Of a stretch of 64,000 nt of DNA, positions 1,265 to 59,411 are shown piece after piece. The notes beneath the pieces are model-generated. The model was not told where the DNA came from and did no database searches. It saw nothing but the letters and a program-made list of their open reading frames with translations. Position numbers and translations under genes: made by a program. Where the stretch lies: positions 372,001 to 436,000 of the IMG/VR virus record IMGVR_UViG_3300050821_013430; one strand, written 5' to 3'. Position 1 is the first letter of the stretch; each line of letters begins with the position of its first letter.

Positions 1265-1400
1265 GTGATATACTCTCCGAATGGTTTTAGCCGTTCGAGA
1301 TTGTGCCATCAACGCTGAGAGCCTGCTTGCCACGCTTGCGCGTGGGCTTCGCAGGTCTTACCTCAACTCCGACAAGGGTTGATATCCCAACCCCGTTCTT
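1265..1400 (-). ncRNA. putative omegaRNA scaffold of TnpB
   Basis: Structured 3' end overlapping the tnpB C-terminus; terminal hairpin TCGAACGG/CCATTCGG then TCAC end; 5' boundary approximate. Confidence 0.55.
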
Positions 1401-2522
1401 GCTTTTCAGCAAGGACATACCTTGTGTATGAATGTTGATCGCGGCATTCGCATCACGATCGTGATGCGTGCCGCAGTTTGAGCAATCCCATTCTCGATCT
1501 TTTAGGTCGAGAGTCTCATTGATATGCTGGCAGCAAGAACAAGTCTTGCTGCTCGGATAGAAACGATCAATGAAGATCACCTTTGAGCCATACTTGCTGG
1601 CCATATAGACCAGTTTCTGAACGAAGGAGTAGAGGCCTAAGTCTCCAATCTTGCGACTACATAAGGCTTGCATCCCTTTCAGGTTGAGGGTCTCTAAGCA
1701 AATTGTCTCGTAGGTTTGCACCAATTGGTAAGCCAACTGCCAGTGAAAGTCTTTTCGTTGGTTGGCGATGTCGTCATGAGCCTTGGCAAGCGCACGAAGT
1801 GCGCGCTTGCTATTCCCACTACCCTTGACCTTACTATCTAACTGCTGATTGAGTCTCCTGATCTTCTTGCTGCTTTGCTTGAAGAACAAGGGAGATTGGA
1901 TCGCTGTACCATCACTTCCTGTCAGGAAGTTTTTGAGCCCGAAGTCGAAACCGACGCTTTTACCCGATCTGGTTTCTTGTTTGGACGCTTCCTGAAAGTC
2001 TGTGGTGATGTAGATGAACCATTCTCCTAATGAGTTCTTTTTGACGGTGAGGGTTTTGATCTTACCCTCCCAGTCTCGGTGCTTGTGAAACCGAAATGTC
2101 TTTCCTCCTCGGCCGTGATAACTTTGTCCGCTGATGTAGAGCGTGTTGTCATCGAGTAGTTTGTAGCCAGTATCTTGCCTGAATGTGATGCTCCGATACT
2201 TGGGCGTCTTCTTGAATTTAGGAGGAGAGGTTTTTACGCCACGTCTCAGATCGTCAAAGAAGTGATCATAGCCGATGTATATACGGTCAACAATCTGACG
2301 AGTGGCTGTAGCATTGATCATCTGCCAGGCAGAATTAGGCTCGTTTCGCCTATCTCGCACCAGCCCATACATGTCGTAGAGACTGATGTAGGTCTTATCC
2401 CGAGAATATGCTTCCCGCTTGGTCAAAAGAACCCAATTGTAGATGTCGCAAGCCACCGTGAGCAAGGCGTCCAAATAGCGGGTTTTGCGAGTGGTATAGA
2501 GTTTGTAGGCGTAGGTCTTCAT
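1287..2522 (-). CDS. tnpB: RNA-guided endonuclease TnpB (IS200/IS605 family)
   Basis: RuvC-I GFDFG, RuvC-II ETL, zinc finger PSSKTCSCC...CSNC, RuvC-III DRDANAAINI; catalytic D/E/D intact. Confidence 0.95.
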   Translation of the reverse strand: MKTYAYKLYTTRKTRYLDALLTVACDIYNWVLLTKREAYSRDKTYISLYDMYGLVRDRRNEPNSAWQMINATATRQIVDRIYIGYDHFFDDLRRGVKTSPPKFKKTPKYRSITFRQDTGYKLLDDNTLYISGQSYHGRGGKTFRFHKHRDWEGKIKTLTVKKNSLGEWFIYITTDFQEASKQETRSGKSVGFDFGLKNFLTGSDGTAIQSPLFFKQSSKKIRRLNQQLDSKVKGSGNSKRALRALAKAHDDIANQRKDFHWQLAYQLVQTYETICLETLNLKGMQALCSRKIGDLGLYSFVQKLVYMASKYGSKVIFIDRFYPSSKTCSCCQHINETLDLKDREWDCSNCGTHHDRDANAAINIHTQGMSLLKSKNGVGISTLVGVEVRPAKPTRKRGKQALSVDGTISNG

Positions 2523-2530
2523 CTCACCAT

Positions 2531-2559
2531 ATCGTAATCCTCTGAGAGATGGTTGTCAA
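2531..2559 (-). promoter_or_regulatory. sigma70-type promoter for tnpB
   Basis: TTGACA-17 bp-TACGAT, 8 nt before the ATG. Confidence 0.7.
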
Positions 2560-35172: not shown

Positions 35173-35730
35173 TCAGTTGTCCTCGCAGAAGCCGGGGCTC
35201 TGATGATGCACCTGCGCGTATTGCAGTACATCGGCGCACATGACATGAGGTGCGGCAGGGCCAAGATCGGGATACATCACCGCAGCATGTTCCACATAGG
35301 TGTGGACTAAGCCCATGGCATGTCCCACCTCATGTTCTACCGTAGTGGTGAACTGATCGTCCGTTTCCACATCCGTCGGAAGCCACACACTACCCCAAGA
35401 GTTTCCACTCGGATACCAGTAGTAGTTGGTGTAGCCAATGTCGGAAGAGTTGGTGTCTTTCTCGATCTGCGCGCGCGTCTCCCCGTTGATGGAAATGGCA
35501 TTGACGCAGGTGCCATCATCGCAAGATCGATTCTCGAAGAAGACATCGAAGGAGATTCCGGAATTGGCTCCCTTAGCCTCCCACTCATTGAGACCATCCA
35601 ACACCAACTGCACACGATGTGGACTGAGGGTGGTCGGATTGATGTAGACTTGGTAGTGATTGGGCAGATGTCCACATCCAAACGATCCGAGAGTCATCAA
35701 TCCCACCATTCCGAGCGTGAACTTGTTCAT
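35173..35730 (-). CDS. matrixin-like (metzincin) metalloprotease lipoprotein
   Basis: SFG-C lipobox; HEVGHAMGLVH followed by Met-turn AVMYP. Confidence 0.85.
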   Translation of the reverse strand: MNKFTLGMVGLMTLGSFGCGHLPNHYQVYINPTTLSPHRVQLVLDGLNEWEAKGANSGISFDVFFENRSCDDGTCVNAISINGETRAQIEKDTNSSDIGYTNYYWYPSGNSWGSVWLPTDVETDDQFTTTVEHEVGHAMGLVHTYVEHAAVMYPDLGPAAPHVMCADVLQYAQVHHQSPGFCEDN

Positions 35731-39226: not shown

Positions 39227-39709
39227 CTACACCTTCACCCATTCCACCGTGCTCTTCCAGAACGGCGGAAGTCTTCTCTCCTTCAATCGTCGGTGCATAG
39301 CATACACCGCGGCGGGAGGACACCCGTGGATATTCCGCTGGGCGCACTTCGCCACCTCCTCCATCGTCCCACATCGGAGGGTAATGATCTCCGGCTCCCA
39401 CCCGAAGGCCAGTGAGGCTTGATAGTAAGGAGCGATCTCCCATGCCTCCGTATTGGTATTGCAGACCACGATCAAGGGAGGAGGAATATCCTTCCATGGA
39501 CACGCCACCTGCTCGATGAACCTACGGAAGCAATCAGCGTGCGCCTGTTCCAACTTGGACGGATCGAACTTGTAGTAGCCATCCGACATGGTGAAGAACT
39601 GATCGGCGCTGATTAGCGCCTTATGTCCGCTCGGCATAGGGAGACTATGTGCGTAGGTATCCTTCCCACTCCCAGGAATACCACTCATGATCACCACTCG
39701 CTTGCTCAT
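39227..39709 (-). CDS. P-loop polynucleotide kinase (AAA_33/N4BP2-like)
   Basis: MSGIPGSGKDT Walker A; ISADQFF; NTN..WE..PY; RNIHG.P. Confidence 0.85.
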   Translation of the reverse strand: MSKRVVIMSGIPGSGKDTYAHSLPMPSGHKALISADQFFTMSDGYYKFDPSKLEQAHADCFRRFIEQVACPWKDIPPPLIVVCNTNTEAWEIAPYYQASLAFGWEPEIITLRCGTMEEVAKCAQRNIHGCPPAAVYAMHRRLKERRLPPFWKSTVEWVKV

Positions 39710-39948
39710 TGTTTCACCTCCACCAACCGATACAACTTCTTGGTATCCGTGTCGTAGAGCAGCACCTCTCCGCCCACATCCTCTGCATCCGCATACACCA
39801 CATTGGGGCCATGTAGGTATTGGGCTAAGTAGGCGGAATCATACTTCCAGGCAGAGGAAAGCGGGCCCCATTGAAGATCGCTATTCAGAAACTGATTCAG
39901 ATGTTTGGGATGCCGAATCACCAGAGCCAGATCGTCGATGTATCTCAT
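39706..39948 (-). CDS. hypothetical protein containing the 32-bp repeat
   Basis: ATGA overlaps at both ends. Confidence 0.6.
   Translation of the reverse strand: MRYIDDLALVIRHPKHLNQFLNSDLQWGPLSSAWKYDSAYLAQYLHGPNVVYADAEDVGGEVLLYDTDTKKLYRLVEVKQ
39811..39842. repeat. 32-bp exact direct repeat, copy 1
   Basis: ATGTAGGTATTGGGCTAAGTAGGCGGAATCAT, identical to 51570-51601. Confidence 0.95.
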
Positions 39949-41953: not shown

Positions 41954-42634
41954 ATGAAGAGTATCGAACGAGAAAAGGCACGGGTTATGCGACAAGAAGG
42001 ACAGAGTGTTAGGGACATTGCTAAGGCGTTAGGGGTCGCCAGAAGTAGTGTCTCTGTATGGGTGAGGGATGTTGTACTTACTCAGGCGCAGATAGATGCG
42101 CTAACGACGCGCAATCCTATCTACGATAGGCAGCACAAGGGCGCGAAAGGAAGACAGCGATTAGCCAGGGAAGCACGCATTGAAGCCAGAAAAAACGGAC
42201 ACGAGGTAGCAAAACGAAAGGAATATCTGCACGCATTGGGATGTGGTCTGTACTGGGGCGAAGGAGCAAAGGATAGGGTAAGCTGTCAATTAGCCAACAG
42301 CGACCCATACTTACTGAAAGTATGGCTTCAATTCCTACATCAGTATTTCCCTGATGTGAAAACGACCCTGATCATCCATTGCTACACTGGCAACGGTCTA
42401 TCAGTTGAGGAGATAGAGAATTACTGGTCTGACACCCTCGGTATTCCTAAGGGCGATTTCAGGAAGACAAGAGTGAATCCAATAAGTAGAGCGAGCCTAC
42501 ACAAGAAGCCACAGAACACGCTTCTCTACGGTACAGCACATATCACTGCTAAGAAAGGGATGCGAATAGTTCAACACATCTTCGGGGCCATTGAGGAATA
42601 TGGTGGCTTCTCTACTGAGTTTGGGTTGGACTAA
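41954..42634 (+). CDS. HTH plus LAGLIDADG-like homing-endonuclease-type protein
   Basis: AAGGAG SD; N-terminal HTH (SVRDIAKALGVARSSVSVWV); LYWGEG...NSDP..L..W..FL. Confidence 0.75.
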   Translation: MKSIEREKARVMRQEGQSVRDIAKALGVARSSVSVWVRDVVLTQAQIDALTTRNPIYDRQHKGAKGRQRLAREARIEARKNGHEVAKRKEYLHALGCGLYWGEGAKDRVSCQLANSDPYLLKVWLQFLHQYFPDVKTTLIIHCYTGNGLSVEEIENYWSDTLGIPKGDFRKTRVNPISRASLHKKPQNTLLYGTAHITAKKGMRIVQHIFGAIEEYGGFSTEFGLD

Positions 42635-42640
42635 CTACAC

Positions 42641-42718
42641 TGGCGTCCCCATCCGGGCTCGAACCGGAACCAACAGATTGAAAGTCTGTCCGCCTAACCA
42701 GTTAGCAGATATGGGGAC
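42641..42718 (-). tRNA. tRNA-Glu(UUC)
   Basis: Acceptor GTCCCCA/TGGGGAC, G discriminator, ACAGA-CTTTCAA-TCTGT, T-loop TTCGAGC, CCA; slightly long D-arm. Confidence 0.88.
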
Positions 42719-42728
42719 ATACACTACT

Positions 42729-43109
42729 CTACTGCGGCACCAACTTCTTGATCATGTACTTGACCAAATCCCGATCAAAAGGCCACTCCTGTGTGGGAAT
42801 CTTGGCAGCAGTCAGCCATGACCGAATGATGGCCGCGCCTTTCCCACCCCAACTATGGCTCACTGCTTGTGCGGGATAGTAGGATGGATCGAGTTCATTC
42901 ACGATGAACTTCGCCACATCCTCCCCACTCCCATCTACGCCCAGGTCGTGATCCAACATCAGCAGACCGATCCGAACCGTCCCGGCTTGCAGAATCTCCT
43001 TCCCCTCATCGCAGGAGAAGGCATGCAAGACCACATGCCCCGCCGCGGTAAAGAGGTCTTCCGCCATGTCGTGCCGTGTCTGGTCATCATCCACGATCAG
43101 GATGTTCAT
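42729..43109 (-). CDS. stand-alone receiver-like domain (cyclic-phosphate-processing REC type)
   Basis: ILIVDDD...LDHDLG...G.DVA..I...VSHS; lacks the canonical REC Lys. Confidence 0.7.
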   Translation of the reverse strand: MNILIVDDDQTRHDMAEDLFTAAGHVVLHAFSCDEGKEILQAGTVRIGLLMLDHDLGVDGSGEDVAKFIVNELDPSYYPAQAVSHSWGGKGAAIIRSWLTAAKIPTQEWPFDRDLVKYMIKKLVPQ

Positions 43110-44276: not shown

Positions 44277-44867
44277 TCAATCGTCTTTGCAGAAGCCGTT
44301 GTTCTCATGGCGCAGGTTGGCATACTGCACCACATCCACGCACATGACATGAGGGGCTGCCTTCTGGTATTCAGGGAACATCAATGACACACCCGGTACG
44401 AAGGTGTGTTGAAGGCCTAACCCATGTCCCACTTCGTGCTGAGTGATGCCACTGAAACCTACAGCATCAATCCCATTCGCCTCCTCATCCGCCTCATCCC
44501 CAGGGACGAACACCCTCGCCCATTCGTGCCCCATGTGATCTGTCCAGTGATAGGTGGTACCCACTGCGTTAGGGTCTCCGGAGAGGCGCCGAATCTCCTC
44601 CACGCTCTCACTGGTAATGGAGAAGGCGTTGTCGCAGGACTCATCGCACATCCGCTCCTCAATCACCACATCGAAGGACAGCCCCACATTGGCAGCCTTG
44701 GACTCCCACTCATCCAGACTTTCGAGCACCATCTGCATGTGGGGTGGGTCGAAGTGGGGGCTGATGTAGACGGTGTAGTGCGAAGGAGGATTGGCGCAGG
44801 CGGTGCCGAAGACGGATGCGGCGAACATCCCCAGCAAACCACCCACACCTAATTCCAGGGTTTTCAT
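44277..44867 (-). CDS. matrixin-like metalloprotease lipoprotein (paralog of 35173)
   Basis: GTA-C; HEVGHGLGLQH; SLMFP Met-turn; shared AAPHVMC.DV.QYA. Confidence 0.85.
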   Translation of the reverse strand: MKTLELGVGGLLGMFAASVFGTACANPPSHYTVYISPHFDPPHMQMVLESLDEWESKAANVGLSFDVVIEERMCDESCDNAFSITSESVEEIRRLSGDPNAVGTTYHWTDHMGHEWARVFVPGDEADEEANGIDAVGFSGITQHEVGHGLGLQHTFVPGVSLMFPEYQKAAPHVMCVDVVQYANLRHENNGFCKDD

Positions 44868-49702: not shown

Positions 49703-50369
49703 CCCACCTCCTCCTCTTCCTCCTCACACTCGTCTTTGTCCTCTGCCATCATGCCCGACATATAGGCGACCGTGCGCCTGTCCTCGCACTCCGCCCACAC
49801 TTCCGCCATTTCCCGACGTTGATCCCTGGGAGCCTTCATTGTCATACCTCCTCACAACCTGCCATACCATATGATAGGCTGTGAGGAACTATCCCACATG
49901 CTGCCCCAAACGCAGAAAACACGAATCCCCAGAAAGGAGCCTTGTGGCCCCTTTCCAGGGTGAATGTAGGTGGATGCCCTACTTGACTCGTTCCGCCTCA
50001 CCTTGTGGGATGTCCTGCACCCCGAAGCGCTGCTGTAGGGTCATTGTCCCCATAGCGCCCAGGTTGTAGTCAAAGGTGACCACGGTGTGGGTTCCTTCCC
50101 GCTTGACTACGGTAACCTCCCACACTTGGCCATACTTGACCGAAAGGTGGGCGCGGATGGTAGGCGAGATGTCGTTCATTGTCCTACCTACCACGCCACC
50201 GCGACCAGACAAGCCACCACGTAGGCCAGTGCCGCACCATAGGCGATGATGTTGTTCATTGTGTGTCTTCTCCCTTCGTGTCGGTTGGGAAACTACAACG
50301 GCCCCAAACCTCCCGTGTATGGGAAGTTAGGGGCCGGAGGGTAGTTCTCCTACCTTGTAGGCTGGGAAC

Positions 50370-50885
50370 CTACTTCGCCGCGGGGGGAGTCACCTTGACG
50401 CAAAGCGTCTTGGATGCGTCCGCAAGGCGCGTCACGACGAAACCGAGTTCCTTACAGCGGATCGCGACTTGCTCGATCGCCATTCCGCTCTCGAATGCCT
50501 CGGAAAGCGCCGAACACGGCACGTTGTACGACCCGGGGAAACCGCCGAGCGAGGCACGCAAGCCAGCGGAAAGCCCGTTGTACTCGGCGCGGCGCGTCTC
50601 GTACTCTTCCGCATACGGCCCCATGAGATTCGCCAGATCCGCGCGAATCTGTTTCTCGGCCTCGCGCTTCCGCTCGGTCGCCATGAACGAAAGCGACTTG
50701 ATCACGCGATCGTTGACGGTACGGATCGTGTCGGGAGTCAGCACCTTGTCGCCGAGAGCCTTGCCGTTGGGCCAGGCATTGGCGAAGATTGCGTGCAAGG
50801 TCGACAGTGCCTCGGTCGCCGCGCTCTCTTCCGTCTCGGAAAGGACCAGAACCTTGTTACTCGTGTCGCTGGGAATCATGGCCAT
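50370..50885 (-). CDS. hypothetical protein, first gene of the leftward region (GC-rich)
   Basis: CAGGAG SD; downstream of a TTGCGC-17-TAGGTT promoter. Confidence 0.7.
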   Translation of the reverse strand: MAMIPSDTSNKVLVLSETEESAATEALSTLHAIFANAWPNGKALGDKVLTPDTIRTVNDRVIKSLSFMATERKREAEKQIRADLANLMGPYAEEYETRRAEYNGLSAGLRASLGGFPGSYNVPCSALSEAFESGMAIEQVAIRCKELGFVVTRLADASKTLCVKVTPPAAK

Positions 50886-50948
50886 GATGACGTATCTCCT
50901 GTTATGTCCCATGTGGGACGGTTGGGTTACTACTGAACGCTACTGCTA

Positions 50949-51091
50949 CGTAGCGGTTAGAACCTAAGGCGCCGCGAAGCACCGCGCAACGTGGCATACT
51001 ACTTGCCTTAGATGCTAACCGCTACGGGAAACGATGTAGGGGGAACCTATACAGTGTGGCTCGACTCCTTACATCGTTTCCGTATCCTGGT
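50949..51091. repeat. two tandem long inverted repeats
   Basis: CGTAGCGGTTAG...CTAACCGCTACG (12 plus 7 bp) and GGAAACGATGTA...TACATCGTTTCC (12 bp). Confidence 0.8.
50957..50989 (-). promoter_or_regulatory. sigma70-type promoter (-35/-10 at 50984-89 and 50961-66)
   Basis: TTGCGC-17 bp-TAGGTT. Confidence 0.5.
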
Positions 51092-51569
51092 AGGATGCTA
51101 TCTCTACCTGATAGTCCAGTGTCGTTTTCTCCCTATGTTTTCGGGGGGTTAGGAAGGACGGGACACGTAACGAGTATCCGACCTAACACTAGACAGGATG
51201 ACCTGGCCCTACTCTAGCCTACCTTGTGGCAGACCACGCACCCACTATGTGGGACATCTTCCGCCTCCGCTTTCATCGCCCCACCTTGCACCCCTTACGG
51301 GGTATGCATGTAAGACGCTAGGACGTTTGGCGCCGATGTAGGACTATTAGGTTGTCAGGGAGCAGAGGTCATCCAACATCCTACCTTGTCCCACGTTGCG
51401 ACCACGGATGTAGCGCGCGGTGCGGGAGGGTAGGTTGCGGGAGAGGACCACGATACAGACATAGATAGCACGTGCTATGCCAAGAGAGGGTAGAGGCTAA
51501 CTATGCGGAATCATTGGAGAGGCACCTGATGTAGGGCAAGGTGGGATGGGGGCGGGAGCCCAGGGTACG

Positions 51570-51601
51570 ATGTAGGTATTGGGCTAAGTAGGCGGAATCA
51601 T
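51570..51601. repeat. 32-bp exact direct repeat, copy 2
   Basis: Identical to 39811-39842; a degenerate third copy lies at 51495-51517. Confidence 0.95.
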
Positions 51602-51678
51602 TGGGGATAGGGTTGGGGTATGGGGCCCCCAGGGTGGGGGAGCCTACCCTCACCCCCAGGGTAGGGGTCTTGCCTACC

Positions 51679-52049
51679 TGGTACAGTTGTTGTATGGGAT
51701 AGAAGCATGCCAAGCCTAGAGGGTAGGGGGAGGTAGGACAGGGCGGGGATGGCCGGTATCTTGCACCGGATAAACTCATGCCAAGGGTGCCGTGTAGTAC
51801 AAGGTGGGAGATGTAGGGCAAGGTCGGGCGGTGCAAAACCCATGCCAAGTGGTAGGATAAGGTGGTTTGGGGCCGGTTGGCATTGAAACTGCAAGGGAAA
51901 GGAACATGCCAAGGGCTTTTGGTAGGAAGTTGTAGGAGATGGTAGGTTTCTCGAGGAATGGCATAGGTATTGCAGGGGAAAGAAGGATACCAGCAGAAAG
52001 GTGGGATATTGTAGTTGGTATGGGGATTGCAAGGACAAGAAGCATGCCA
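51679..52049 (+). repeat. array of 34-bp units with sigma54 -24/-12 geometry
   Basis: TGGY-N8-TG(C/T)A-N11-(C/G)AT(G/A)CCA at 51679, 51750, 51878, 51959 and 52016; partial unit ending 51847. Confidence 0.8.
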
Positions 52050-52465
52050 TAGGGGGCTGGAGCCCCCGTTTCCTGGGAGGTAGGCCAGGGTGGGGCGGTG
52101 TGGGCCTCCCAAACAGGGGTAAAACACTCTTCCGCCCGCCTTCAACACTAATCCCTCCCATTCAATCAAACCCTGCTCGACACTAATCTGACTATCCTAT
52201 CCGCCCCACCAATCCTACCATTCCTAAACACCCCTCAATCTATTCCACCTTACCTTACTGCCCGAAACTACTCCTCCTATAAGGCCCTAGGAAGCGTCGC
52301 ACCTTAGAACGTAGGGGGATGTCAATCTCAGTCGAAAGCGTCCTATAACTAAGCCTAGCCCCACTAATAGGCCATCTACCCACCACCGCCACTTCAAATC
52401 AGACCCCCTCAACCCTCAAAACCTGGATAATTCGCCGAACTGCAAAATTGACGCCGGAAACCGAA

Positions 52466-52482
52466 TGCAAGAATCGTGCCAA
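52466..52482 (-). promoter_or_regulatory. sigma54-type (-24/-12) site
   Basis: TTGGCACGATTCTTGCA, full consensus. Confidence 0.65.
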
Positions 52483-52500
52483 AATGTAAGCGTCAAATGA

Positions 52501-52749
52501 ATGGAATTAGATACTTCAACTCTTGGAGGTGCCATTCTTTGCGGTAAGGACAGCCCGACATCGGTATTGGCTGCTGCCGCGGGACTCCTGAACAAGAGGA
52601 AGACGACAGATGGGACAGCCTTTGGATTGAAAATCGTGCCAGGAGATCATGAGCGAGAGGATCCGCGTAAAATGGAGAGTGGGGCGAGAGCCCTAAACCT
52701 TATTAGGAGGAATAAGACGCTCGGAAAGGATCGTAATATCATCATCTGA
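52501..52749 (+). CDS. hypothetical protein
   Basis: First ORF right of the non-coding region. Confidence 0.45.
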   Translation: MELDTSTLGGAILCGKDSPTSVLAAAAGLLNKRKTTDGTAFGLKIVPGDHEREDPRKMESGARALNLIRRNKTLGKDRNIII

Positions 52750-52923
52750 AAACTCCTCATCACCCACAAACCAACTATATTCTCTCTCACGACCAACATA
52801 AACACCGTTCTCCCACCTATTACCTTCAATATAGGTATAAGAAGCGATGCGGGGCTCATATTTCTTATCCTTATCTTGAATCCAATAGTATCCTAATTCT
52901 CTAAGTGGCGTCTTGCTTCCCAT
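52693..52923 (-). CDS. hypothetical protein
   Basis: Start reset to MGSKTP (AAGGA SD). Confidence 0.45.
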   Translation of the reverse strand: MGSKTPLRELGYYWIQDKDKKYEPRIASYTYIEGNRWENGVYVGREREYSWFVGDEEFSDDDITILSERLIPPNKV

Positions 52924-52998
52924 ATGGTGTCCTTTGTTATTGACATGGTAAATCCAAGAGAATAAGAAGTCAAGAGGATAAAATGACATTGGGAAGAG

Positions 52999-53904
52999 AT
53001 GCTGAAAACTGGAATCATTACCGCCCCACCCGCTATGGTGAGAGACATCAGCGACTTCGTGGTAGGAGCTTATGCTACACGGATCCTGGAAAACTTTGAG
53101 GAGAAGAGATTCCCACGGAACAAAGAAAGTATGGCGATACGAACCGTGCTGGAAGCGTTGGCCGAACGAAGCGGCAAGAAAATGATCATCCACCAGATAG
53201 ACTTCGCCTACTACTTTGCGAAATTGAATTTTGATGATTGGGATGGGCCGGTGGGACCTGGGGAGAAGATAAAAGAAGTGCTAGGAGAGCACGGAGTAGT
53301 AGGAGTAAAGTGCTATGAAGTCTTCTACCCTACAATGGACAAACATCCACGACCGGGAGCTAATGCTCAATGGAGCTATAACTTCCAAATCACCACCTAT
53401 GCAGAATTGCCAATGGCTCAGAATCTGCAAGACTTTCGTCAATTGACCTTGGATTTGCAAGGGAAACAGAATGAGCTGAAGGTAACGGTGGCCCATGAAC
53501 TCATTCATATGGTCCAGTATATCATTCAGATAATGCGAGGATTGAAAGAGATAGGAGGACTACCTGCTGAGAAAGTCAGGCATTCGGCCCCTCCCTTGGT
53601 TGATCCGAGCATCCCTTATCACTTACGGGATGAAGAGTTTTACACCAGTTTGGCGGATACCATTGAAACCTTTATGGAGCATGTTCGGAATGTGCCGGTG
53701 GAATACCGGGAAATAGCACTGCGGAGCTTTTTGAACCTACCATTCGCGGCGAGCAGAGATGCTCGGAAGAATTTGGTTGTTAGCACTTTCTTCGAGAAGA
53801 TGCATAAGGATGATCCGAAAAGATGGGCGGAGTATGCCAAGAAGTTTGTGAAGCATTTGAGTCAGCATCCGGAAATCATGGGAATGGAAAGCGCTGCGGA
53901 ATAA
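52999..53904 (+). CDS. HEXXH zincin-like protein
   Basis: VAHELIHMVQY...EEF. Confidence 0.65.
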   Translation: MLKTGIITAPPAMVRDISDFVVGAYATRILENFEEKRFPRNKESMAIRTVLEALAERSGKKMIIHQIDFAYYFAKLNFDDWDGPVGPGEKIKEVLGEHGVVGVKCYEVFYPTMDKHPRPGANAQWSYNFQITTYAELPMAQNLQDFRQLTLDLQGKQNELKVTVAHELIHMVQYIIQIMRGLKEIGGLPAEKVRHSAPPLVDPSIPYHLRDEEFYTSLADTIETFMEHVRNVPVEYREIALRSFLNLPFAASRDARKNLVVSTFFEKMHKDDPKRWAEYAKKFVKHLSQHPEIMGMESAAE

Positions 53905-53987
53905 AGCATTACGCGCTGCATAAAAAGGCATCTCTTGTTTGAGGTCCTTAGAAACATCCCTCAAAATCTTCCAAAAAGGCTGCACAT

Positions 53988-54710
53988 ATGAATTTGTTGA
54001 AGGCTCTGTTGATTGCTTGTTTGTCGATTTTCAGTTTCGGTTGTGGTACCAGTATGCACGTCAGTGGGCAAGTTAGTGTGCCAAACTTGATGAGTAAGAC
54101 GGTAGTACTAACTACTTATGTGATGAATGAAGATGATGGTACCGCCTCAGTAAAACCATATTGCAGCGGAGTCTTTATTTCGGAACGGGAGATTTTGACA
54201 GCAAGACATTGCGCGGCAGCGATAGCAGAAAAGGATAACGTGGAAGAGTTGGATAAGCTTCCAATGCACTACACCTTAGCCTCCGAAGCGGTAGGCGTTG
54301 GCAAGGAGCCTGCTGCGATGCATTTGGCCTTCGTGGTCAAAGAAGATAAGGACAAAGATTTGGCACTACTGCTATTGCCGAAACAAGGGATTCCGGCTCA
54401 TGGAATTGCGCGAATCGCGGACGAGATGCCCGCACTGGGCGAAGCGGTGGAAGTTATTGGAACGCCCACGGGAAATTATTTTACTTTGAGCCACGGCTAT
54501 GTTGCGGCAGTCAGAGAAGACTATCATGATCGAAAAGGTACCTTTTTGCAAGTGAGTGGTAATGGCATCTACTTCGGCAACAGTGGCGGACCTGCTTACA
54601 ATGAAAAAGGTGAGCTGGTCGGGATTGCAGACTTTTTGAGTATGAGATTGCCCGGCAGCGTTTTCTTTGTGGCAGTACCGGAACTGAAAGAGTTTATCGA
54701 AGAAGTCTAA
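53988..54710 (+). CDS. trypsin-like (S1) serine protease lipoprotein
   Basis: SFG-C; LTARHC, DLALL and GNSGGP catalytic triad. Confidence 0.9.
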   Translation: MNLLKALLIACLSIFSFGCGTSMHVSGQVSVPNLMSKTVVLTTYVMNEDDGTASVKPYCSGVFISEREILTARHCAAAIAEKDNVEELDKLPMHYTLASEAVGVGKEPAAMHLAFVVKEDKDKDLALLLLPKQGIPAHGIARIADEMPALGEAVEVIGTPTGNYFTLSHGYVAAVREDYHDRKGTFLQVSGNGIYFGNSGGPAYNEKGELVGIADFLSMRLPGSVFFVAVPELKEFIEEV

Positions 54711-54726
54711 CGACTGCTTGTAAGCC

Positions 54727-55338
54727 ATGAAATTTTGGTTGTTGATAGACTTGTGCTTAGCCCTTCTTTGTGTGGGGTGCTATCATAACTTCTACCAATA
54801 CACCCGAGTTGCCCCAACAGAGATAAGTTGGCGGATTATTTCGGTCTATGTCGATCGTGGTTTTACGGAACAAGAAAAGATAGAAGTCGTCAATGCTATC
54901 ATGCAGTGGAATTATGTTCTCAATAACTACATCCAATTACGAATAGAATCCTTTGATGCAACCTTCGATGAGGATAGTGTTGCGGGAATACAAGAGAAGC
55001 GGGGATACATGTTCCGGAAAATTTCTGAGTCGGAAGCCTGCGCCTTGAAAGAATGCTCCGATGAAACCTTAGCCTTTGTTAATGGAATAGGAAGCAGAGG
55101 CGATACCGTTTATGTCATTGGCGGAAGAGAACGGGAAGAAAAACTAAGAGGCGTAGTAATGCATGAAATCGGGCACCTGATGGGCGTCAGACATATTGAA
55201 GGTACCTTGATGGACGAAAACTACGACCCCATTACCTTTCAATGCGTGGATCGAATTACCGAAAGGTGGGCAGCGTATCGACAAGGACTGGACCCCAATA
55301 AATTGAACTATTGTATCATTGGAGATGATCCGAACTAA
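54727..55338 (+). CDS. matrixin-like metalloprotease lipoprotein
   Basis: CVG-C; HEIGHLMGVRH; TLMD Met-turn. Confidence 0.85.
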   Translation: MKFWLLIDLCLALLCVGCYHNFYQYTRVAPTEISWRIISVYVDRGFTEQEKIEVVNAIMQWNYVLNNYIQLRIESFDATFDEDSVAGIQEKRGYMFRKISESEACALKECSDETLAFVNGIGSRGDTVYVIGGREREEKLRGVVMHEIGHLMGVRHIEGTLMDENYDPITFQCVDRITERWAAYRQGLDPNKLNYCIIGDDPN

Positions 55339-55982
55339 GTAGAACTGGAATCCGAATCATCGTAATAGGTGTCATAGATTTCTCTGGTTAGACCCATATC
55401 TAAAACTACCGGATGTTTTCCATTAGTTCCATAACTGGAAATCCGTGCCAAATCCCCCGGCAAAACCCTAAATGTCTTGCTGAGTCTTACAAGGTCTTGA
55501 TAGAGTTCAGTCTTAGCAATTCGCTCAAAATTGTTGGGTTTCTCGTGCTCGCCATTGGAAAGGTCTCTCAAACCATATCGAAGAGCGTCTCCGAACTGCT
55601 TGAAATCAATGCCGGTCATTTGCTCAAAATCCTTCTCATTGATCTTCTCTAAAAAAGGAGCCACCCGCCAGTAGCCCTGCTTGTCAGCAAAAATGGTAGG
55701 ATTGATATATTTGGATTTCATTCCAGGATCGGATTCCACCTTATTTTGGGCTAGGCCTTTTTTGTTCTTGGCCAGTTTTAGCACTTGACCGTCGGGAAGT
55801 TTATAGATGATACGGGCTGATCCAGAAGAGAGGTGCTCCGTATGCTTCTCAGCATATTCAATACGATCCTTGAAATGCTCTAACTGAGACAGTTGAGAAA
55901 GAATGGTTTTGGTATCTTCGACACTAACCTTGACCAATTGTTGGTAAAAAGTGGCTAACCGGGCAAGGGAGTTATAGTTCAT
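55335..55982 (-). CDS. protein-kinase-like fold protein
   Basis: SSGSARIIY Gly loop, VLK, GDL catalytic Asp, VVLDMG (DFG-like). Confidence 0.65.
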   Translation of the reverse strand: MNYNSLARLATFYQQLVKVSVEDTKTILSQLSQLEHFKDRIEYAEKHTEHLSSGSARIIYKLPDGQVLKLAKNKKGLAQNKVESDPGMKSKYINPTIFADKQGYWRVAPFLEKINEKDFEQMTGIDFKQFGDALRYGLRDLSNGEHEKPNNFERIAKTELYQDLVRLSKTFRVLPGDLARISSYGTNGKHPVVLDMGLTREIYDTYYDDSDSSST

Positions 55983-56098
55983 GATCTTTTGGACAAGAAA
56001 GTTATTCTGCTGCTAGCATTGTTACGACAGAAATTTGATATCCATTTGATATATCGAATTATTGCCCTTGATCTAGGCATGATCCATCATTCTCATAT

Positions 56099-57220
56099 AT
56101 GCAGCGAACAGTTTCCGTCCCAGTCAATGTCCCAACAGGCTTTCTTGATTACTTGAAGACCTGCTCGGTCATCTTCAATAGGCATATCGATTGGGCCTTC
56201 GAGAACTATACCTACAACAAGATCAAGGCCCACCAAGCCCTCTACTACCCTATTCGGGCAGAGTTCCCAGAGATACCTTCCTCGGTCTTGCAGGCTATCC
56301 GAGATACTGCTGTGGAGGCTGTAAAAGCCATCGACTTCAAGTTCAAGCCCACCAAGAAGCCCCATTCAGCAGTTAGATACAATGCTCGAACCATATCTCT
56401 TCGTGGCAATTTGCTCTCGTTCTCTTGGTCGGGCGATAGGATCAAGCAGTTAATCAAACTGCCTACTTTCTTCACCAATCGCTATAAGGACTGGAAGTTC
56501 CAATCAGCCACCATCGGCTATGACAAGCGGAAAGCCCAAGTCAGAGCCAACCTTACTTTTACTTACCCCACTCCTCCTATCGTTCAGACTGACAACTCTG
56601 ATCGAATAGTTGGGGCAGATCGAGGCTTGCACAACATCATCTCGCTGTCGGATGGTACTCTGTTCAATGCCTCTCGTGTTCGAGCCCAGAAACGCAAGTT
56701 CCTGTATGTAAAACGACAGCTCCAAGCAAAAGGCACTCGATCATCAAAGCGTCTCCTCAAAAAGAGATCAGGTCGAGAAATGCGGTTCAGCTCGGATGTC
56801 AATCATTGTCTATCCAAGAAGTTGGTCAATCTTCCGTATGATGTGTTCGTCCTCGAAAACCTTGCGGGTATCCGTAAACGAAACAAGGGTCGAAAACTCA
56901 ACGGCTGGCTGTCTAACTGGACATTCTTTCAGTTAGAGCAGTTCATCGGGTACAAGACAGAAGCACTTGGCAAGCAAGTAGTCAAGGTGGATGCCCGCTA
57001 TACCAGTCAGAAATGCTCAGACTGTGGGAATACAGACAAAGCAAGTAGGAAGGGCTCTCGATACTTATGCGTTGAATGTGGGCATGCGGAGCATGCCGAT
57101 ATCAACGCCGCTAAGAATATCAAGGCCAACTACACTCTCTCCTTGGCTGCAAAGAACAAGGAGCAGGCTCTCGTCAATGAGCCAAATGCCTCGGTCGCAA
57201 GATCAGAGGCAAGTTATTAG
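56099..57220 (+). CDS. tnpB: RNA-guided endonuclease TnpB
   Basis: VGADRG, LENL, YTSQKCSDC...CVEC, ADINAAKNI; catalytic D/E/D intact. Confidence 0.95.
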   Translation: MQRTVSVPVNVPTGFLDYLKTCSVIFNRHIDWAFENYTYNKIKAHQALYYPIRAEFPEIPSSVLQAIRDTAVEAVKAIDFKFKPTKKPHSAVRYNARTISLRGNLLSFSWSGDRIKQLIKLPTFFTNRYKDWKFQSATIGYDKRKAQVRANLTFTYPTPPIVQTDNSDRIVGADRGLHNIISLSDGTLFNASRVRAQKRKFLYVKRQLQAKGTRSSKRLLKKRSGREMRFSSDVNHCLSKKLVNLPYDVFVLENLAGIRKRNKGRKLNGWLSNWTFFQLEQFIGYKTEALGKQVVKVDARYTSQKCSDCGNTDKASRKGSRYLCVECGHAEHADINAAKNIKANYTLSLAAKNKEQALVNEPNASVARSEASY

Positions 57221-57239
57221 TTTTCTGATAACGCTTGAC
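57150..57239 (+). ncRNA. putative omegaRNA scaffold
   Basis: Overlaps the tnpB 3' end; terminal hairpin 57213-57232 then TTGAC; 5' boundary approximate. Confidence 0.5.
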
Positions 57240-57266
57240 ACACCAAAATGCGGAATAAGGCAGGGG

Positions 57267-57911
57267 TTAGGCGAAGAGAGAGCAAGTATCAAAATCATCC
57301 AATTGATTAGGAAGTTGTTCGACATCTAAGAGTCGTTGAAATCGAAGAGGACAATCCAATGGATCATAACTGAAATTACGACTCCGTATTCCTCTTTGCA
57401 TTTTACGAGGAGTGATCTCGATAACCGACTCTTTTCGCGATACAAAATTGATAGCCCTATACTCTTTCTTTTCTTTCACCAGAATGGCATTCTCATAGAA
57501 AACTGGTATCTCAGAGTATTGGGCTTTTTTCAGATCGAGATCAAAAGATTTGGAACTATAACGATATGCGACGCAACTACCGCAGGTACGATGAAAATTG
57601 ATGGCATTGATGGCTTGACTTTTCTTACGAAAGGATTGAAACTTCTCTAAATCAACGCTACTTTGCGACTCGGAGAAATAAGGAGACAAGTAAAAGTCAT
57701 TCGAGGTCAAATCGTAATGTACTTCTATTTGGAAATCAGTTCGACGAGAACTCATCGGATAACCGGTAATAGAAAATGTTCCAATGGCACGCTCGGCCTC
57801 AAGAGCCACTAGTTGAGGTGTCCAAGTATTGAGAGTCAATTCTAACACCAATGTCCCACTACAAAGGGGACAGTTAGTTCGATAATCGAGAAAGTTTTGT
57901 AGAGTAGTCAT
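57267..57911 (-). CDS. hypothetical protein with CxxC pairs
   Basis: CPLC...CGSC. Confidence 0.6.
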   Translation of the reverse strand: MTTLQNFLDYRTNCPLCSGTLVLELTLNTWTPQLVALEAERAIGTFSITGYPMSSRRTDFQIEVHYDLTSNDFYLSPYFSESQSSVDLEKFQSFRKKSQAINAINFHRTCGSCVAYRYSSKSFDLDLKKAQYSEIPVFYENAILVKEKKEYRAINFVSRKESVIEITPRKMQRGIRSRNFSYDPLDCPLRFQRLLDVEQLPNQLDDFDTCSLFA

Positions 57912-57951
57912 CTATCCCAGTCTAAATGCCGGGAGAAGAGATGTCAATGCC

Positions 57952-58428
57952 TTAGCCTAATTGATCGACTACTTGCTTGATTAGGCCGTGCTCATTCTGC
58001 CAATTTTGCACATCTTCGGGAGTATGTTCCTGAGGGGTATGAAGCATTTTTTCGAGCCAATTCATTCTGCCCTTGAAAGCCGGAGAATTTGCATACCAAA
58101 CGCCCATCTCATCGAGAGTGGGTTTTTGACCGCTCCTAATTTTATTGGAGAGGGTTTGGAAGAAGGAAAAAAGTGCCCTGCCTGTAAGATGTTGCTGGGG
58201 AACTGGGACCGTGGTAGGGGTGGCAGGCTTTGGCGCAGGAATACTTGGCGCTGCTTTAGGGGCTTCTGGCACCTGTACATTCGAGGGATCGAACTGTACA
58301 TACTGGCCAGGGCCGGTCATTTGCTTCAATTCCTGAGAATATCTCTTGAGATAGCTCTCGGGGGTTCCGAATCGAGCCAATTTCTCGAATAGTTCAATTT
58401 TCTTCTTCAGATCGTCAAAGTTTTGCAT
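57952..58428 (-). CDS. hypothetical protein with Pro-rich linker
   Basis: 158-aa ORF; GAGGA SD. Confidence 0.65.
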   Translation of the reverse strand: MQNFDDLKKKIELFEKLARFGTPESYLKRYSQELKQMTGPGQYVQFDPSNVQVPEAPKAAPSIPAPKPATPTTVPVPQQHLTGRALFSFFQTLSNKIRSGQKPTLDEMGVWYANSPAFKGRMNWLEKMLHTPQEHTPEDVQNWQNEHGLIKQVVDQLG

Positions 58429-58463
58429 AGGGATTCCTCTTAGCTTATCGTAATGTCAGAATA

Positions 58464-59411
58464 TTAGTCGCCTTCGGTGCCTTGGTCAATGGAATTGTCC
58501 TCTGCTTCCAATTCACTTACGGTCAGGTCATCTTCATCAATATCTTCCGCAAGACCCCCAAACATATCGTCTCCAATTTGATGAACGTCATGATCTTCAT
58601 CGTCGTCGTCATGATGATGGTGGTGGTGATGATGGTGCTCGGATTCTTCAGAATTATCAACATCAGTATCAGTATCAGTATCAACTTCATCATCCTCGTC
58701 GGGAGTGGCTTCCACTTCTTCTAGAAGATTGGGGCCGTGATGTCGTCGGTGTTCGTCTCCCTCAAATTCAACCTCGCCCCTAAACTTACCCTCGGCCTCG
58801 AAGTCGTCATCATCCCCAAACATATCAGCATCCCCATGATCATGCTCCTCGAATTCTTCTTCTATGGTATGACATCCATGATGATGCTCCCGAACCTCAA
58901 ATCTACCGTATTTATCCTTGTCATCAACATCCAAAATGTATTCATCATTAGGATTATCTCTATCACGAGGAGGATCATCTAGATCTTGATGGTGGTAATG
59001 GGCCCGATCCGTTAGCTCATCGCTAATGGTTGGAGGGGGACGATGACGATGCTCGAAATGGATCCTATCTCCCGCAATCAATCCCTGGAGATACATCTTG
59101 TCGATAGAGGTGGTGAAACGAGTAGGCCCTACTTTATTATGGAGAATATAGGCCAAACCGGCTTTCAGGAATAAAACGATATCAGCCAGGTGTCGGTTAG
59201 TACAATCTGAAAGGTCCCTCAATACCAAAACTCGAAGATGATTGAGATGGATATTCAGAGGATAGTTAGGATCGGCAACGACTCGGGCATCAAACTCTGC
59301 GGCAGTAATAATCTCGGTAAGATAGAGTTGTCGGGTAAGAACATCTTGGATCTGTTGTACAACATCTGTGTTGGTAAAAATGATAGCGGGAGGAAAGCAA
59401 TGATGGCGCAT
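58464..59411 (-). CDS. protein with acidic and His-rich disordered C-terminus
   Basis: Globular N-terminal ~100 aa; D/E-rich tail containing HHHHHHHHH. Confidence 0.7.
   Translation of the reverse strand: MRHHCFPPAIIFTNTDVVQQIQDVLTRQLYLTEIITAAEFDARVVADPNYPLNIHLNHLRVLVLRDLSDCTNRHLADIVLFLKAGLAYILHNKVGPTRFTTSIDKMYLQGLIAGDRIHFEHRHRPPPTISDELTDRAHYHHQDLDDPPRDRDNPNDEYILDVDDKDKYGRFEVREHHHGCHTIEEEFEEHDHGDADMFGDDDDFEAEGKFRGEVEFEGDEHRRHHGPNLLEEVEATPDEDDEVDTDTDTDVDNSEESEHHHHHHHHHDDDDEDHDVHQIGDDMFGGLAEDIDEDDLTVSELEAEDNSIDQGTEGD

What the first reader, a model, noticed from the sequence alone, without database searches (positions are those of the whole stretch)
51495..51625. Non-coding 32-mer identical to the inside of a gene 11.8 kb away
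Seen: ATGTAGGTATTGGGCTAAGTAGGCGGAATCAT occurs exactly at 39811-39842 and at 51570-51601. The first copy lies inside the translationally coupled gene 39706-39948 (codons for D-S-A-Y-L-A-Q-Y-L-H, using TTA and CTA, which look rare here), about 100 nt upstream of the polynucleotide kinase gene. A degenerate copy, GGCTAAcTAtGCGGAATCATTGG, sits 87 bp earlier at 51495. A 32-nt chance match in 64 kb is negligible. Inference: (a) a plus-strand RNA from the control region would be perfectly antisense to that mRNA, as an sRNA or guide; (b) a phage-specific promoter/operator repeated in front of the PNK gene; or (c) a recombination or looping site linking the control region to 39.8 kb.
Basis: partly seen in the sequence, partly recalled or inferred. 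Interest (0 to 1): 0.75.

Follow-up and report, generated by a model that had tools for sequence, protein, structure and literature searches.

The report
Control-region 32-mer copied into a gene
A 32-base piece of a giant soil phage's regulatory region is repeated letter for letter inside a small early gene 11.8 kb away; the repeat is real, but it looks like a recent copy from the regulatory region (a repair patch or an extra protein-binding site) rather than a guide or antisense RNA.

Summary
The 32-mer occurs exactly twice, at window 39811-39842 and 51570-51601, both on the + strand, with random flanks and none expected by chance. Three assemblies and the source run's unitig graph support two true copies. 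The window lies in a complete 472.7-kb soil megaphage. Copy 2 is native: it sits in an ~87-bp tandem unit, within a phased GTAGG array, in a 1.8-kb non-coding gap. Four lines of evidence say the gene copy was derived from it: rare codons, base composition, local motifs that continue past both borders at copy 2, and a diverged local paralogue. Copy 1 replaces, in frame, a segment of an ORFan gene coupled to a PNK-like kinase gene. I found no CRISPR array, no sRNA-like promoter or terminator, no RNA over the 32-mer in the RNA data I could examine, no integrase, resolvase or TnpA, no recombinant contig and no link to the phage's four TnpB genes. RNA contigs start about 60-150 nt to the left of the control-region copies, in a strongly structured leader. 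Best reading: a recent ectopic copy of an upstream regulatory DNA element, so whatever factor binds the element would also bind it in the gene. Function is unproven. Interest is moderate.

The parts
51570..51601 (+). Copy 2 of the 32-mer, the native (donor) copy in the non-coding gap
   Evidence: Exact match. G-C = +8, typical of this region: 46% of its 32-nt windows reach that value. Both borders continue local motif families: cGATGTAGG occurs 5 times in the region, and GAATCATTGG is shared with the degenerate copy. It carries two GTAGG pentamers of the local array.
39811..39842 (+). Copy 1 of the 32-mer, the derived copy, antisense inside an ORFan early gene (codons 36-46)
   Evidence: Exact match. 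Its codon adaptation is in the lowest 2.8% of 11-codon windows, and it uses the two rarest Leu codons. Its composition is atypical for the gene block: 4.9% of windows reach it. It is a frame-preserving replacement, because the weak homology to the relative's syntenic ORF continues on both sides.
51483..51517 (+). Degenerate local paralogue of the element (core 51495-51517, 21/23 identical)
   Evidence: It shares the 3-nt TGG extension with copy 2 but not with copy 1.
51483..51668 (+). Two tandem units of about 87 bp, each a core followed by ATGGGG..CCCAGGGTA
   Evidence: Alignment A1.
39706..39948 (-). 80-aa ORFan gene that holds copy 1; translationally coupled (ATGA) to both neighbours
   Evidence: It matches only itself among 5.8 billion proteins. 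Public gene calls include it. The AlphaFold model is uninformative, pLDDT 42.
39227..39709 (-). PNK-like P-loop kinase gene immediately downstream
   Evidence: AAA_33 at 4e-8; phrog_2071 and phrog_505.
50913..52692 (.). 1.8-kb non-coding gap between two leftward genes: G-rich on + to about 52100, then C-rich; GC falls from 0.58 to 0.45 across it
50920..51440 (-). Strongly structured segment seen in RNA libraries (leader or ncRNA), directly left of the control-region copies; strand not determined
   Evidence: Fold z = -5.75 on the minus strand and -4.91 on the plus strand. RNA-library contigs at 51097-51424, 50716-50917 and 50661-50938, all 100% identical, come from two soil metatranscriptomes.
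51338..52084 (+). Strand-biased, partly 10-bp-phased GTAGG array
   Evidence: 14 copies on + against 3.7 +/- 2.0 expected, and 3 on the other strand.
51467..52481 (.). Cluster of sigma-54-type -24/-12 boxes on both strands, including the genome's only perfect match (52481 to 52466, minus strand) and a weak box (51482 to 51467, minus strand) that abuts the degenerate copy
   Evidence: 5 hits at 10/12 or better against 0.058 expected, reached in 0 of 2000 simulations.
50370..50912 (-). First gene of the leftward block; its 5' part is present in both RNA libraries
   Evidence: No family hit.
41954..42634 (+). HTH + LAGLIDADG homing-endonuclease-like gene, the only + strand gene between the two copies
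   Evidence: HTH_38 and HTH_23. 77 homologues. The profile hits the I-DmoI motif at E 0.011. Model pLDDT 92.6. Top VIA-align hits are LAGLIDADG domains, Z 5-8.

Best explanation
The 32-mer is a native piece of regulatory DNA. It is half of an ~87-bp tandem unit inside a phased GTAGG array, lying 60-180 bp upstream of where leftward RNA contigs begin. One verbatim copy of it was written, recently and in the same orientation, over a similar-length segment of an ORFan early gene 11.76 kb downstream in the same leftward gene block. Shown: the identity itself, two true copies, the abrupt borders, the direction of copying (control region to gene), and replacement in frame. Inferred: (i) at the control region the element acts as DNA, as an upstream binding site for a sequence-specific factor that controls the leftward start; (ii) the gene copy arose as a short templated patch during break repair or template switching; (iii) because it carries 20 of the 23 conserved core bases, whatever protein binds the control-region element should bind the gene copy too, giving at most an operator- or roadblock-type side effect about 100 nt before the PNK-like gene. 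Whether that effect is selected is unknown. The pair is also a passive 32-bp direct repeat that could mediate loss of the 11.76-kb block.
For: Exactness and borders. Only three copies in the genome. Direction of copying: rare Leu codons and lowest-2.8% codon window; G-C = +8 is reached by 46% of control-region windows but only 4.9% of gene-block windows; GATGTAGG and GAATCATTGG continue past the identity only at copy 2; a diverged local paralogue and tandem unit. Replacement rather than insertion: the relative's syntenic ORF aligns across residues 25-50 in the present frame, and removing the 32 nt would shift the frame. DNA-level role at the control region: RNA-library contigs at 51097-51424 and 50661-50938 but none over 51444-52500, and no RNA run listed for 51430-51730. 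The 32-mer segment does not fold better than shuffles, whereas the neighbouring segment has z = -5.75. The GTAGG array is phased and strand-biased. A plausible source of breaks exists: an HTH-LAGLIDADG endonuclease-like gene lies 2.1 kb away.
Against: No repair event can be observed, and there is no microhomology beyond the borders. Frame-preserving ectopic patches without flanking homology are rare. No variant of the 80-aa protein turned up, the three assembled contigs that carry it encode it identically, and the 84-kb contig carries both DNA copies, so neither recency nor neutrality is shown. No binding protein is identified. The RNA evidence comes from assembled contigs of two small metatranscriptomes, has no strand information, and 'holes prove nothing'. 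The link to the endonuclease is circumstantial.
Confidence: 0.45

Rival explanations
1. Selected dispersed operator or 'stoperator'. The same regulator binds the control-region element and the intragenic copy, both oriented alike with respect to leftward transcription. It would block or tune transcription entering the PNK-like gene, or loop the 11.76-kb early domain.
For: All three copies have one orientation. The control-region copies sit upstream of the leftward RNA contigs. The array of phased motifs suggests protein binding. An HTH-containing sequence-specific DNA-binding protein is encoded inside the block on the opposite strand.
Against: Operators do not need 32/32 identity, and the local paralogue itself is degenerate. 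There are only three copies. The copy sits inside a tightly coupled gene although intergenic gaps lie nearby. Copy 1 lacks the last 3 conserved core bases. No regulator has been shown to bind.
Confidence: 0.25
2. Trans-acting antisense or guide RNA. A + strand transcript of the control region carrying the 32-mer pairs perfectly with the early mRNA (or guides a nuclease to it), 100 nt before the PNK-like gene.
For: Perfect 32-nt complementarity between a + strand RNA and the minus-strand mRNA. The segment is unstructured, as a seed or guide should be, and lies next to a highly structured RNA. The phage carries four TnpB-like genes. Plus-strand sigma-54-like boxes exist in the region.
Against: The sequence was copied from control region to gene, not captured from the target. 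There is no sigma-70-like promoter or intrinsic terminator around it. No RNA contig covers it in the two RNA libraries that hold the adjacent segments, and no RNA run was listed for it. All good + strand boxes lie downstream of it. There is no Rfam family, no sub-match at a guide position of any TnpB, and no similarity to the TnpB 3' ends. The control region has no other long match to the genome, so it is not a hub of guides.
Confidence: 0.12
3. Recombination site. The two direct repeats are att/res-like cores, or hot spots, at which the 11.76-kb early block is excised as a circle, deleted or amplified.
For: The repeats are direct and 11,759 bp apart. The inner unitigs have somewhat higher depth (9.8, 12.3) than the outer ones (6.7, 9.1). 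A circle would carry the leftward start region plus the early genes.
Against: There is no tyrosine integrase, serine recombinase or Y1 transposase in the genome. The 28-nt core occurs in one metagenome contig only, which carries both copies in the parental order. The assembled places carrying the flanking genes were reported as having mostly the same neighbours. The block is not compositionally distinct from its left flank. The depth differences are within GC and coverage noise and come from unitig means only.
Confidence: 0.07
4. CRISPR-type spacer or solitary mini-array, or a target for a host CRISPR system that has been copied as a decoy.
For: 32 nt is a typical spacer length. The 437-kb relative carries two CRISPR-like arrays.
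Against: There is no array anywhere in this genome. What flanks the 32-mer is a tandem unit whose 'spacer' part is itself repeated. The relative's repeat has no counterpart here and none of its spacers hits this phage. The 28-nt core is absent from 185,579 species genomes.
Confidence: 0.02
5. Assembly artefact.
For: The repeat length (32) is close to common k-mer sizes.
Against: An assembler cannot create identity. Two incoming and two outgoing unitigs meet at a node of summed depth. The ORF is intact and coupled across copy 1. An 84-kb contig from a separate assembly carries both copies, and the 80-aa protein is encoded identically on three contigs.
Confidence: 0.02

Closest known systems
Stoperators of cluster A mycobacteriophages (L5 gp71 repressor sites) and the dispersed asymmetric C1 operators of phage P1 (own knowledge)
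   Same: Asymmetric sites of one regulatory element occur both in the control region and far away, some of them inside genes, in a fixed orientation relative to transcription.
   Different: Those are 13-17 bp, present in about 17-30 copies and tolerate mismatches. Here there are three copies, one pair is identical over 32 nt, and no repressor is known.
I-TevI operator versus homing site in phage T4 (own knowledge)
   Same: A long sequence related to a site inside a gene recurs in a promoter region and is read by a homing endonuclease with an HTH. An HTH-LAGLIDADG gene lies between the two copies here.
   Different: No binding or cleavage is shown, the endonuclease family differs (GIY-YIG versus LAGLIDADG), and the T4 sites are similar, not identical.
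Short ectopic (templated) repair tracts and short-patch gene conversion
   Same: Abrupt borders, a donor-context signature, and a recipient with foreign composition and codon usage.
   Different: Classical conversion needs flanking homology, and none is seen here. The event itself cannot be observed.
Phage antisense RNAs (lambda OOP, P1/P7 c4, P22 sar) (own knowledge)
   Same: A control-region RNA complementary to an early mRNA could be drawn from the sequence.
   Different: Those RNAs have their own promoter and terminator and are either cis-encoded or pair over short loops. Here no transcript, promoter or terminator is found.
attL/attR cores of integrated elements
   Same: Identical direct repeats of a few tens of bp flank a block of accessory genes.
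   Different: There is no recombinase, no compositional boundary at the left repeat and no empty-site or circle junction.
Exact promoter/5'UTR cassettes of the related 437-kb phage G001
   Same: The relative does spread long exact regulatory repeats, 40-60 nt at 3-6 loci.
   Different: The one cassette family I inspected lies directly upstream of start codons; the others were not placed relative to genes. The sequences are unrelated, and this phage has ten times fewer exact repeats (88 against 917 of 18 nt or more).

Membership tests
CRISPR array / spacer | Two or more near-identical direct repeats of 23-50 nt flanking unique spacers | tested here: not met
   A TRF and k-mer scan of the whole genome found no array. 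The flanks of copy 2 belong to a tandem unit whose core is itself repeated.
CRISPR array / spacer | Cas effector or adaptation genes in the genome | tested here: inconclusive
   Only four TnpB-like genes were found. Other Cas families were not searched one by one.
TnpB omega-RNA guide | Guide directly 3' of a scaffold that overlaps the 3' end of a tnpB gene | tested here: not met
   The nearest tnpB is 4.5 kb away. There is no sub-match of 11 nt or more at a guide position and no similarity to the four 3' ends.
Trans-acting sRNA gene | Own promoter and terminator delimiting a short transcript | tested here: not met
   No sigma-70-like promoter or intrinsic terminator in 50800-53100. Other promoter types are not excluded.
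Trans-acting sRNA gene | Transcript detected over the element | tested here: not met
   RNA-library contigs cover 50661-50938 and 51097-51424 but not 51444-52500. No RNA run was listed for 51430-51730. The test is weak: contigs only, and two small libraries.
Site-specific recombination site (att/res) | Cognate tyrosine or serine recombinase | tested here: not met
   PF00589, PF00239 and PF01797 are absent from the genome.
Site-specific recombination site (att/res) | Recombinant junction (circle or deletion) in sequence data | tested here: inconclusive
   None among assembled contigs. Unitigs break at the repeat and cannot tell. Read-level counting was not possible.
Dispersed operator / stoperator | Several copies in a fixed orientation relative to transcription | tested here: met
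   Three copies, all on the + strand, that is the same orientation relative to the leftward genes. Three is a small number.
Dispersed operator / stoperator | Bound by a phage regulator | not testable with these tools
Sigma-54 promoter with upstream activator site | -24 GG / -12 GC box at correct spacing downstream of the element | tested here: inconclusive
   A weak box (9/12) on the minus strand at 51482 to 51467 abuts the degenerate copy, and the 32-mer would lie about 110-145 nt upstream of its predicted start. No such box follows copy 1.
Sigma-54 promoter with upstream activator site | Enhancer-binding AAA+ activator and sigma-54 available | tested here: not met
   The phage has no sigma-54 DNA-binding domain. 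Its only Sigma54_activat hit is a ClpB-type chaperone. The host is unknown.
LAGLIDADG homing endonuclease (gene 41954-42634) | LAGLIDADG helix ending in a conserved acidic residue plus Gly, and the alpha-beta-beta-alpha-beta-beta-alpha core | tested here: met
   The family consensus is ..LYWAEG.. with E103 90% or more conserved and G104 invariant. The profile hits I-DmoI at E 0.011. Ten or more of the top structural matches are LAGLIDADG domains, Z 5-8. Activity was not tested, and Foldseek alone found nothing.

The most novel reading that the evidence does not exclude
The control region makes a guide-like RNA, a large structured scaffold with an unstructured 32-nt segment. That RNA would perfectly target the phage's own early operon just before the PNK-like RNA-repair gene, either with one of the four orphan TnpB-like proteins or through RNase III. 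This would be a self-targeting, programmable regulator in a megaphage whose relative still carries CRISPR arrays.
Probability: 0.08. Interest if true: 0.8.

Novelty: new member of a known kind. Interest (0 to 1): 0.38.

Why it matters
If the gene copy is only a repair patch, it is a clean natural example of a short templated ectopic tract in a phage genome. Donor and recipient can be told apart, and a homing-endonuclease-like gene sits nearby. If it is bound by the same factor as the control-region element, it would be a stoperator-like device in an uncultivated 472-kb soil phage, placed just before RNA-repair-type genes. Either way, the work defines the control region of this phage: an abundant, highly structured leader RNA seen in field metatranscriptomes, a phased GTAGG array, and the densest sigma-54-type box cluster in the genome. 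These are better experimental entry points than the 32-mer itself.

Tried and rejected
- **CRISPR or mini-array:** no arrays, and the relative's repeat and spacers do not match this phage.
- **Decayed paralogue or pseudogene:** the flanks are random.
- **General phage promoter:** only 3 copies, and no phage RNA polymerase.
- **Known RNA family:** no Rfam hit in 50000-53500, and only sub-threshold miRNA noise in 53500-59000.
- **TnpB guide:** no sub-match at a guide position and no scaffold similarity.
- **Phage-encoded bEBP for the sigma-54 boxes:** the only hit is a ClpB-like chaperone. There is no RtcB.
- **Conservation test:** the 80-aa protein is an ORFan. The phage database gave no DNA match. 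The only IMG/VR relative is at 36% protein identity, with no DNA homology in the control region.
- **Host CRISPR spacer or host sequence:** none among 185,579 species genomes.
- **Structure of the 80-aa protein:** pLDDT 42, uninformative.
- **Function of the first leftward gene:** nothing found.
- **Apparent discrepancy in contig counts for the 80-aa protein:** resolved; it is on 3 contigs like its neighbours.
- **Unitig depth imbalance as evidence for circles:** not interpretable, because these are mean depths of four unitigs that differ in GC.

Full report
**Observation**

The 32-mer is present exactly twice in the window, at 39811-39842 and 51570-51601, both on the + strand. No further match appears even with three mismatches, and none in 100 shuffles. 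The identity ends abruptly at both borders; in register, the flanks agree at only 1-4 of 10 positions.

The window is bases 372001-436000 of a 472,749-bp IMG/VR virus record rated 100% complete. Its ends overlap by about 353 bp, so it is circular or carries a terminal repeat. Genome-wide the 20-nt core has three copies at up to 3 mismatches: the two exact ones and the degenerate one 87 bp upstream of copy 2. All other exact repeats of 26 nt or more that I examined looked like paralogous genes (collagen-like repeats, a multi-copy gene family) or tandem repeats.

**Not an artefact**

An 84-kb JGI contig carries both copies at 99.99-100% identity. Three assembled contigs encode the 80-aa protein, and the places were reported as having mostly the same neighbours. 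In the source run the k=31 unitigs break exactly at the repeat. The 32-nt node has depth 18.8, equal to the sum of the two incoming unitigs (6.7 + 12.3) and the two outgoing ones (9.82 + 9.13). The 'loose ends' reported at 51570 and 51601 are simply the flanks of copy 1.

**Context of copy 1**

Copy 1 lies antisense within an 80-aa gene (39706-39948, minus strand). This gene overlaps the preceding gene and the following PNK-like P-loop kinase gene (39227-39709) by ATGA. The protein is an ORFan: only itself among 5.8 billion proteins.

In the only detectable relative (G001, 437 kb, PNK-like protein 36% identical), a 96-aa ORF occupies the same coupled position. It aligns weakly (E 0.003) over residues 25-50, on both sides of the 32-mer-encoded residues 36-46, in the present frame. 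Deleting the 32 nt in silico shifts the frame. Copy 1 therefore replaced an ancestral segment of similar length rather than being a plain insertion.

**Context of copy 2**

Genes run leftward (minus strand) up to 50912. A 76-aa leftward gene at 52693-52923, with a sigma-70-like promoter at 52973-52945, bounds the other side. So 50913-52692 is a 1.8-kb non-coding gap.

The gap is G-rich on the + strand up to about 52100, then C-rich, and GC drops from 0.58 to 0.45 across it. Copy 2 and the degenerate copy are the cores of two tandem units of about 87 bp. They lie within a strand-biased array of GTAGG pentamers: 14 copies against 3.7 expected, several exactly 10 bp apart. Region-specific motifs include GATGTAGG (5 of the 18 + strand copies in the genome) and CATGCCAAG (4 of 4).

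**Direction of copying**

Four independent lines point from control region to gene.
- **Codon usage.** The two Leu codons in the segment are the rarest locally (TTA 11 and CTA 21 of 398). The 11-codon window ranks in the lowest 2.8% for codon adaptation.
- **Composition.** The 32-mer has G-C = +8. That value is reached by 46% of control-region windows but only 4.9% of gene-block windows, and the rest of the gene has the opposite skew.
- **Borders.** At copy 2 both borders continue local motif families beyond the identity: one base to the left (GATGTAGG) and three to the right (GAATCATTGG, shared with the degenerate copy). Neither continues at copy 1.
- **Local paralogue.** The interior of the 32-mer matches the diverged local paralogue.

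**Transcription**

Two soil metatranscriptomes from different studies hold contigs 100% identical to 51097-51424 and to 50661-50938 / 50716-50917. They hold nothing over 51444-52500. A search restricted to 51430-51730 listed no RNA run.

The transcribed stretch 50920-51440 folds far better than shuffles: z = -5.75 on the minus strand and -4.91 on the plus strand. It includes two long hairpins just before the first gene. The 32-mer segment does not fold better than shuffles (z +0.5 and -1.0). There is no sigma-70-like promoter, no intrinsic terminator and no Rfam family.

The simplest reading is that a leftward RNA starts near 51425-51460, so the control-region copies are upstream DNA at about -30 to -180. 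A weak sigma-54-type box on the minus strand (51482 to 51467) directly abuts the degenerate copy. These RNA data are contigs without strand information, so this step is an inference.

**Alternatives tested**

- **CRISPR.** No array in the genome. The relative has two CRISPR-like arrays, but its repeat and spacers have no counterpart here.
- **TnpB guide.** The phage has four TnpB-like genes and no TnpA. No part of the 32-mer recurs at a guide position, and the control region does not resemble their 3' ends.
- **Guide hub.** The control region shares no other long match with the genome. Its count of matches of 13 nt or more (22) is below the random-region mean (35).
- **Recombination.** No integrase or resolvase, and no recombinant contig.
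- **Host sequence or spacer.** None in 185,579 species genomes.

**A possible cause or reader**

The only + strand gene between the two copies (41954-42634) sits next to tRNA-Glu in a patch of lower GC. It has an N-terminal resolvase/transposase-type HTH and belongs to a widespread family of about 225 aa. The family's conserved LYWAEG motif aligns with the I-DmoI LAGLIDADG motif. Its confident model (pLDDT 92.6) matches LAGLIDADG domains as the best structural hits, at Z 5-8. Foldseek alone found nothing.

Such enzymes read long asymmetric sites and make double-strand breaks. This is circumstantial support for a break-repair origin of the patch, and it also gives a candidate protein for reading a 32-bp site.

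**Verdict**

What is shown: a real, exact, two-copy 32-mer whose donor is the control region and whose recipient is a coding gene. What is inferred: the element works as DNA upstream of a leftward start, and the gene copy is a recent ectopic patch that may bind the same factor.

My probabilities are:
- patch with at most incidental binding: 0.45
- selected operator or stoperator: 0.25
- antisense or guide RNA: 0.12
- recombination site: 0.07
- CRISPR-like: 0.02
- artefact: 0.02
- something else: the remainder

Nothing here needed a referred step.

Noticed in passing
window 51467-52481 (also 38658, 43918; genome 369458, 369645): Dense cluster of sigma-54-type -24/-12 boxes on both strands. The genome's only perfect consensus match, TGGCACGATTCTTGCA, is at 52481 to 52466 (minus strand). 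There are 5 hits at 10/12 or better against 0.058 expected. Further good boxes sit in intergenic gaps of the minus-strand gene block, but on the + strand. The phage has no sigma-54 or bEBP gene, and the cluster is not shared by the relative G001.
   Followed up: partly
window 50920-51440: A non-coding segment that folds very strongly (z -5.75) and is present, 100% identical, in two soil metatranscriptomes from different studies. It could be a leader or a stable ncRNA. No Rfam family; strand unknown. Long hairpins at 50949-51026 and about 51030-51084 lie between it and the first gene.
   Followed up: partly
window 41954-42634 (+), beside tRNA-Glu 42641-42718 (-): Free-standing HTH + LAGLIDADG homing-endonuclease-like gene on the opposite strand in a lower-GC patch. 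It belongs to a widespread family of about 225 aa with no Pfam endonuclease annotation.
   Followed up: yes
window 56099-57220 (+), window about 1287-2555 (-), genome 149200-150414 (-), genome 311648-313069 (+): Four TnpB-like genes (OrfB_IS605 + Cas12f1-like TNB domain) in one phage genome, with no TnpA. Two of them are paralogues sharing 18-20-nt inverted exact matches. Their omega-RNAs and guides were not analysed.
   Followed up: partly
whole genome G000 (10-kb bins): GC content climbs steadily from about 0.38 at 200 kb to 0.56 at 415 kb, then drops sharply to 0.45 at the non-coding gap (window about 52 kb). This compositional gradient along a phage genome is unexplained. Contigs and unitigs span the drop, so chimerism is unlikely.
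   Followed up: no
genome 1-353 and 472397-472749: The record's ends repeat each other: 350 of 353 bases fall in four exact blocks. The genome is therefore circular or has a direct terminal repeat, although IMG/VR labels it 'linear'.
   Followed up: no
genome 369430-369980 (2 kb left of the window): A second non-coding island inside the minus-strand gene block uses the same motif vocabulary as the control region (TGGCATG-N5-TTGCT twice, CCAGGTAGGCAAGAC, CCTACATGG, GGTAGG) in inverted orientation.
   Followed up: partly
window 42729-43109 (-), 39227-39709 (-), 42641-42718 (-): RNA-repair flavour of the block: a cREC_REC (cyclic-phosphate-processing receiver) protein, a PNK-like kinase and a tRNA-Glu. 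No RtcB in the genome. In bacteria the Rtc RNA-repair operon is sigma-54/RtcR-dependent (own knowledge), which may or may not relate to the sigma-54-like boxes.
   Followed up: partly
relative G001: L025-L026 (99.6-101.5 kb and 109.2-111.0 kb); also 197-202 kb and other loci: The 437-kb relative carries two CRISPR-like arrays (37-nt hairpin repeat, period 72-74, about 37 repeats matched by the pattern used). It also has several families of 40-60-nt exact cassettes at 3-6 loci each; one family lies directly before start codons and another contains a TTGACA -35-like motif. No spacer hit this phage or the rest of G001 in a short-query BLAST.
   Followed up: partly
window 35173-35700 (-) and 44277-44867 (-); 54727-55338 (+); 53988-54710 (+): Paralogous Zn-metallopeptidase-like genes (Matrixin motif) about 9.1 kb apart with 71-74% identical DNA stretches, plus a third metallopeptidase-like gene and a trypsin-like protease just right of the gap.
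   Followed up: no
window 49905-52106 in run X3: A 2025 soil run holds a related strain. Its contig over the sigma-54-box / 34-nt-unit array (51832-52106) differs at 1 of 275 bases, whereas coding pieces differ at 1-9%, which suggests constraint on the array. The 32-mer itself was not covered.
   Followed up: no
unitigs of run X1 around both copies: Mean depths are inner flanks 9.8 and 12.3 against outer flanks 6.7 and 9.1. This is compatible with coverage or GC noise, or with a minority of circles or duplications of the 11.76-kb block. It cannot be decided from unitigs.
   Followed up: no
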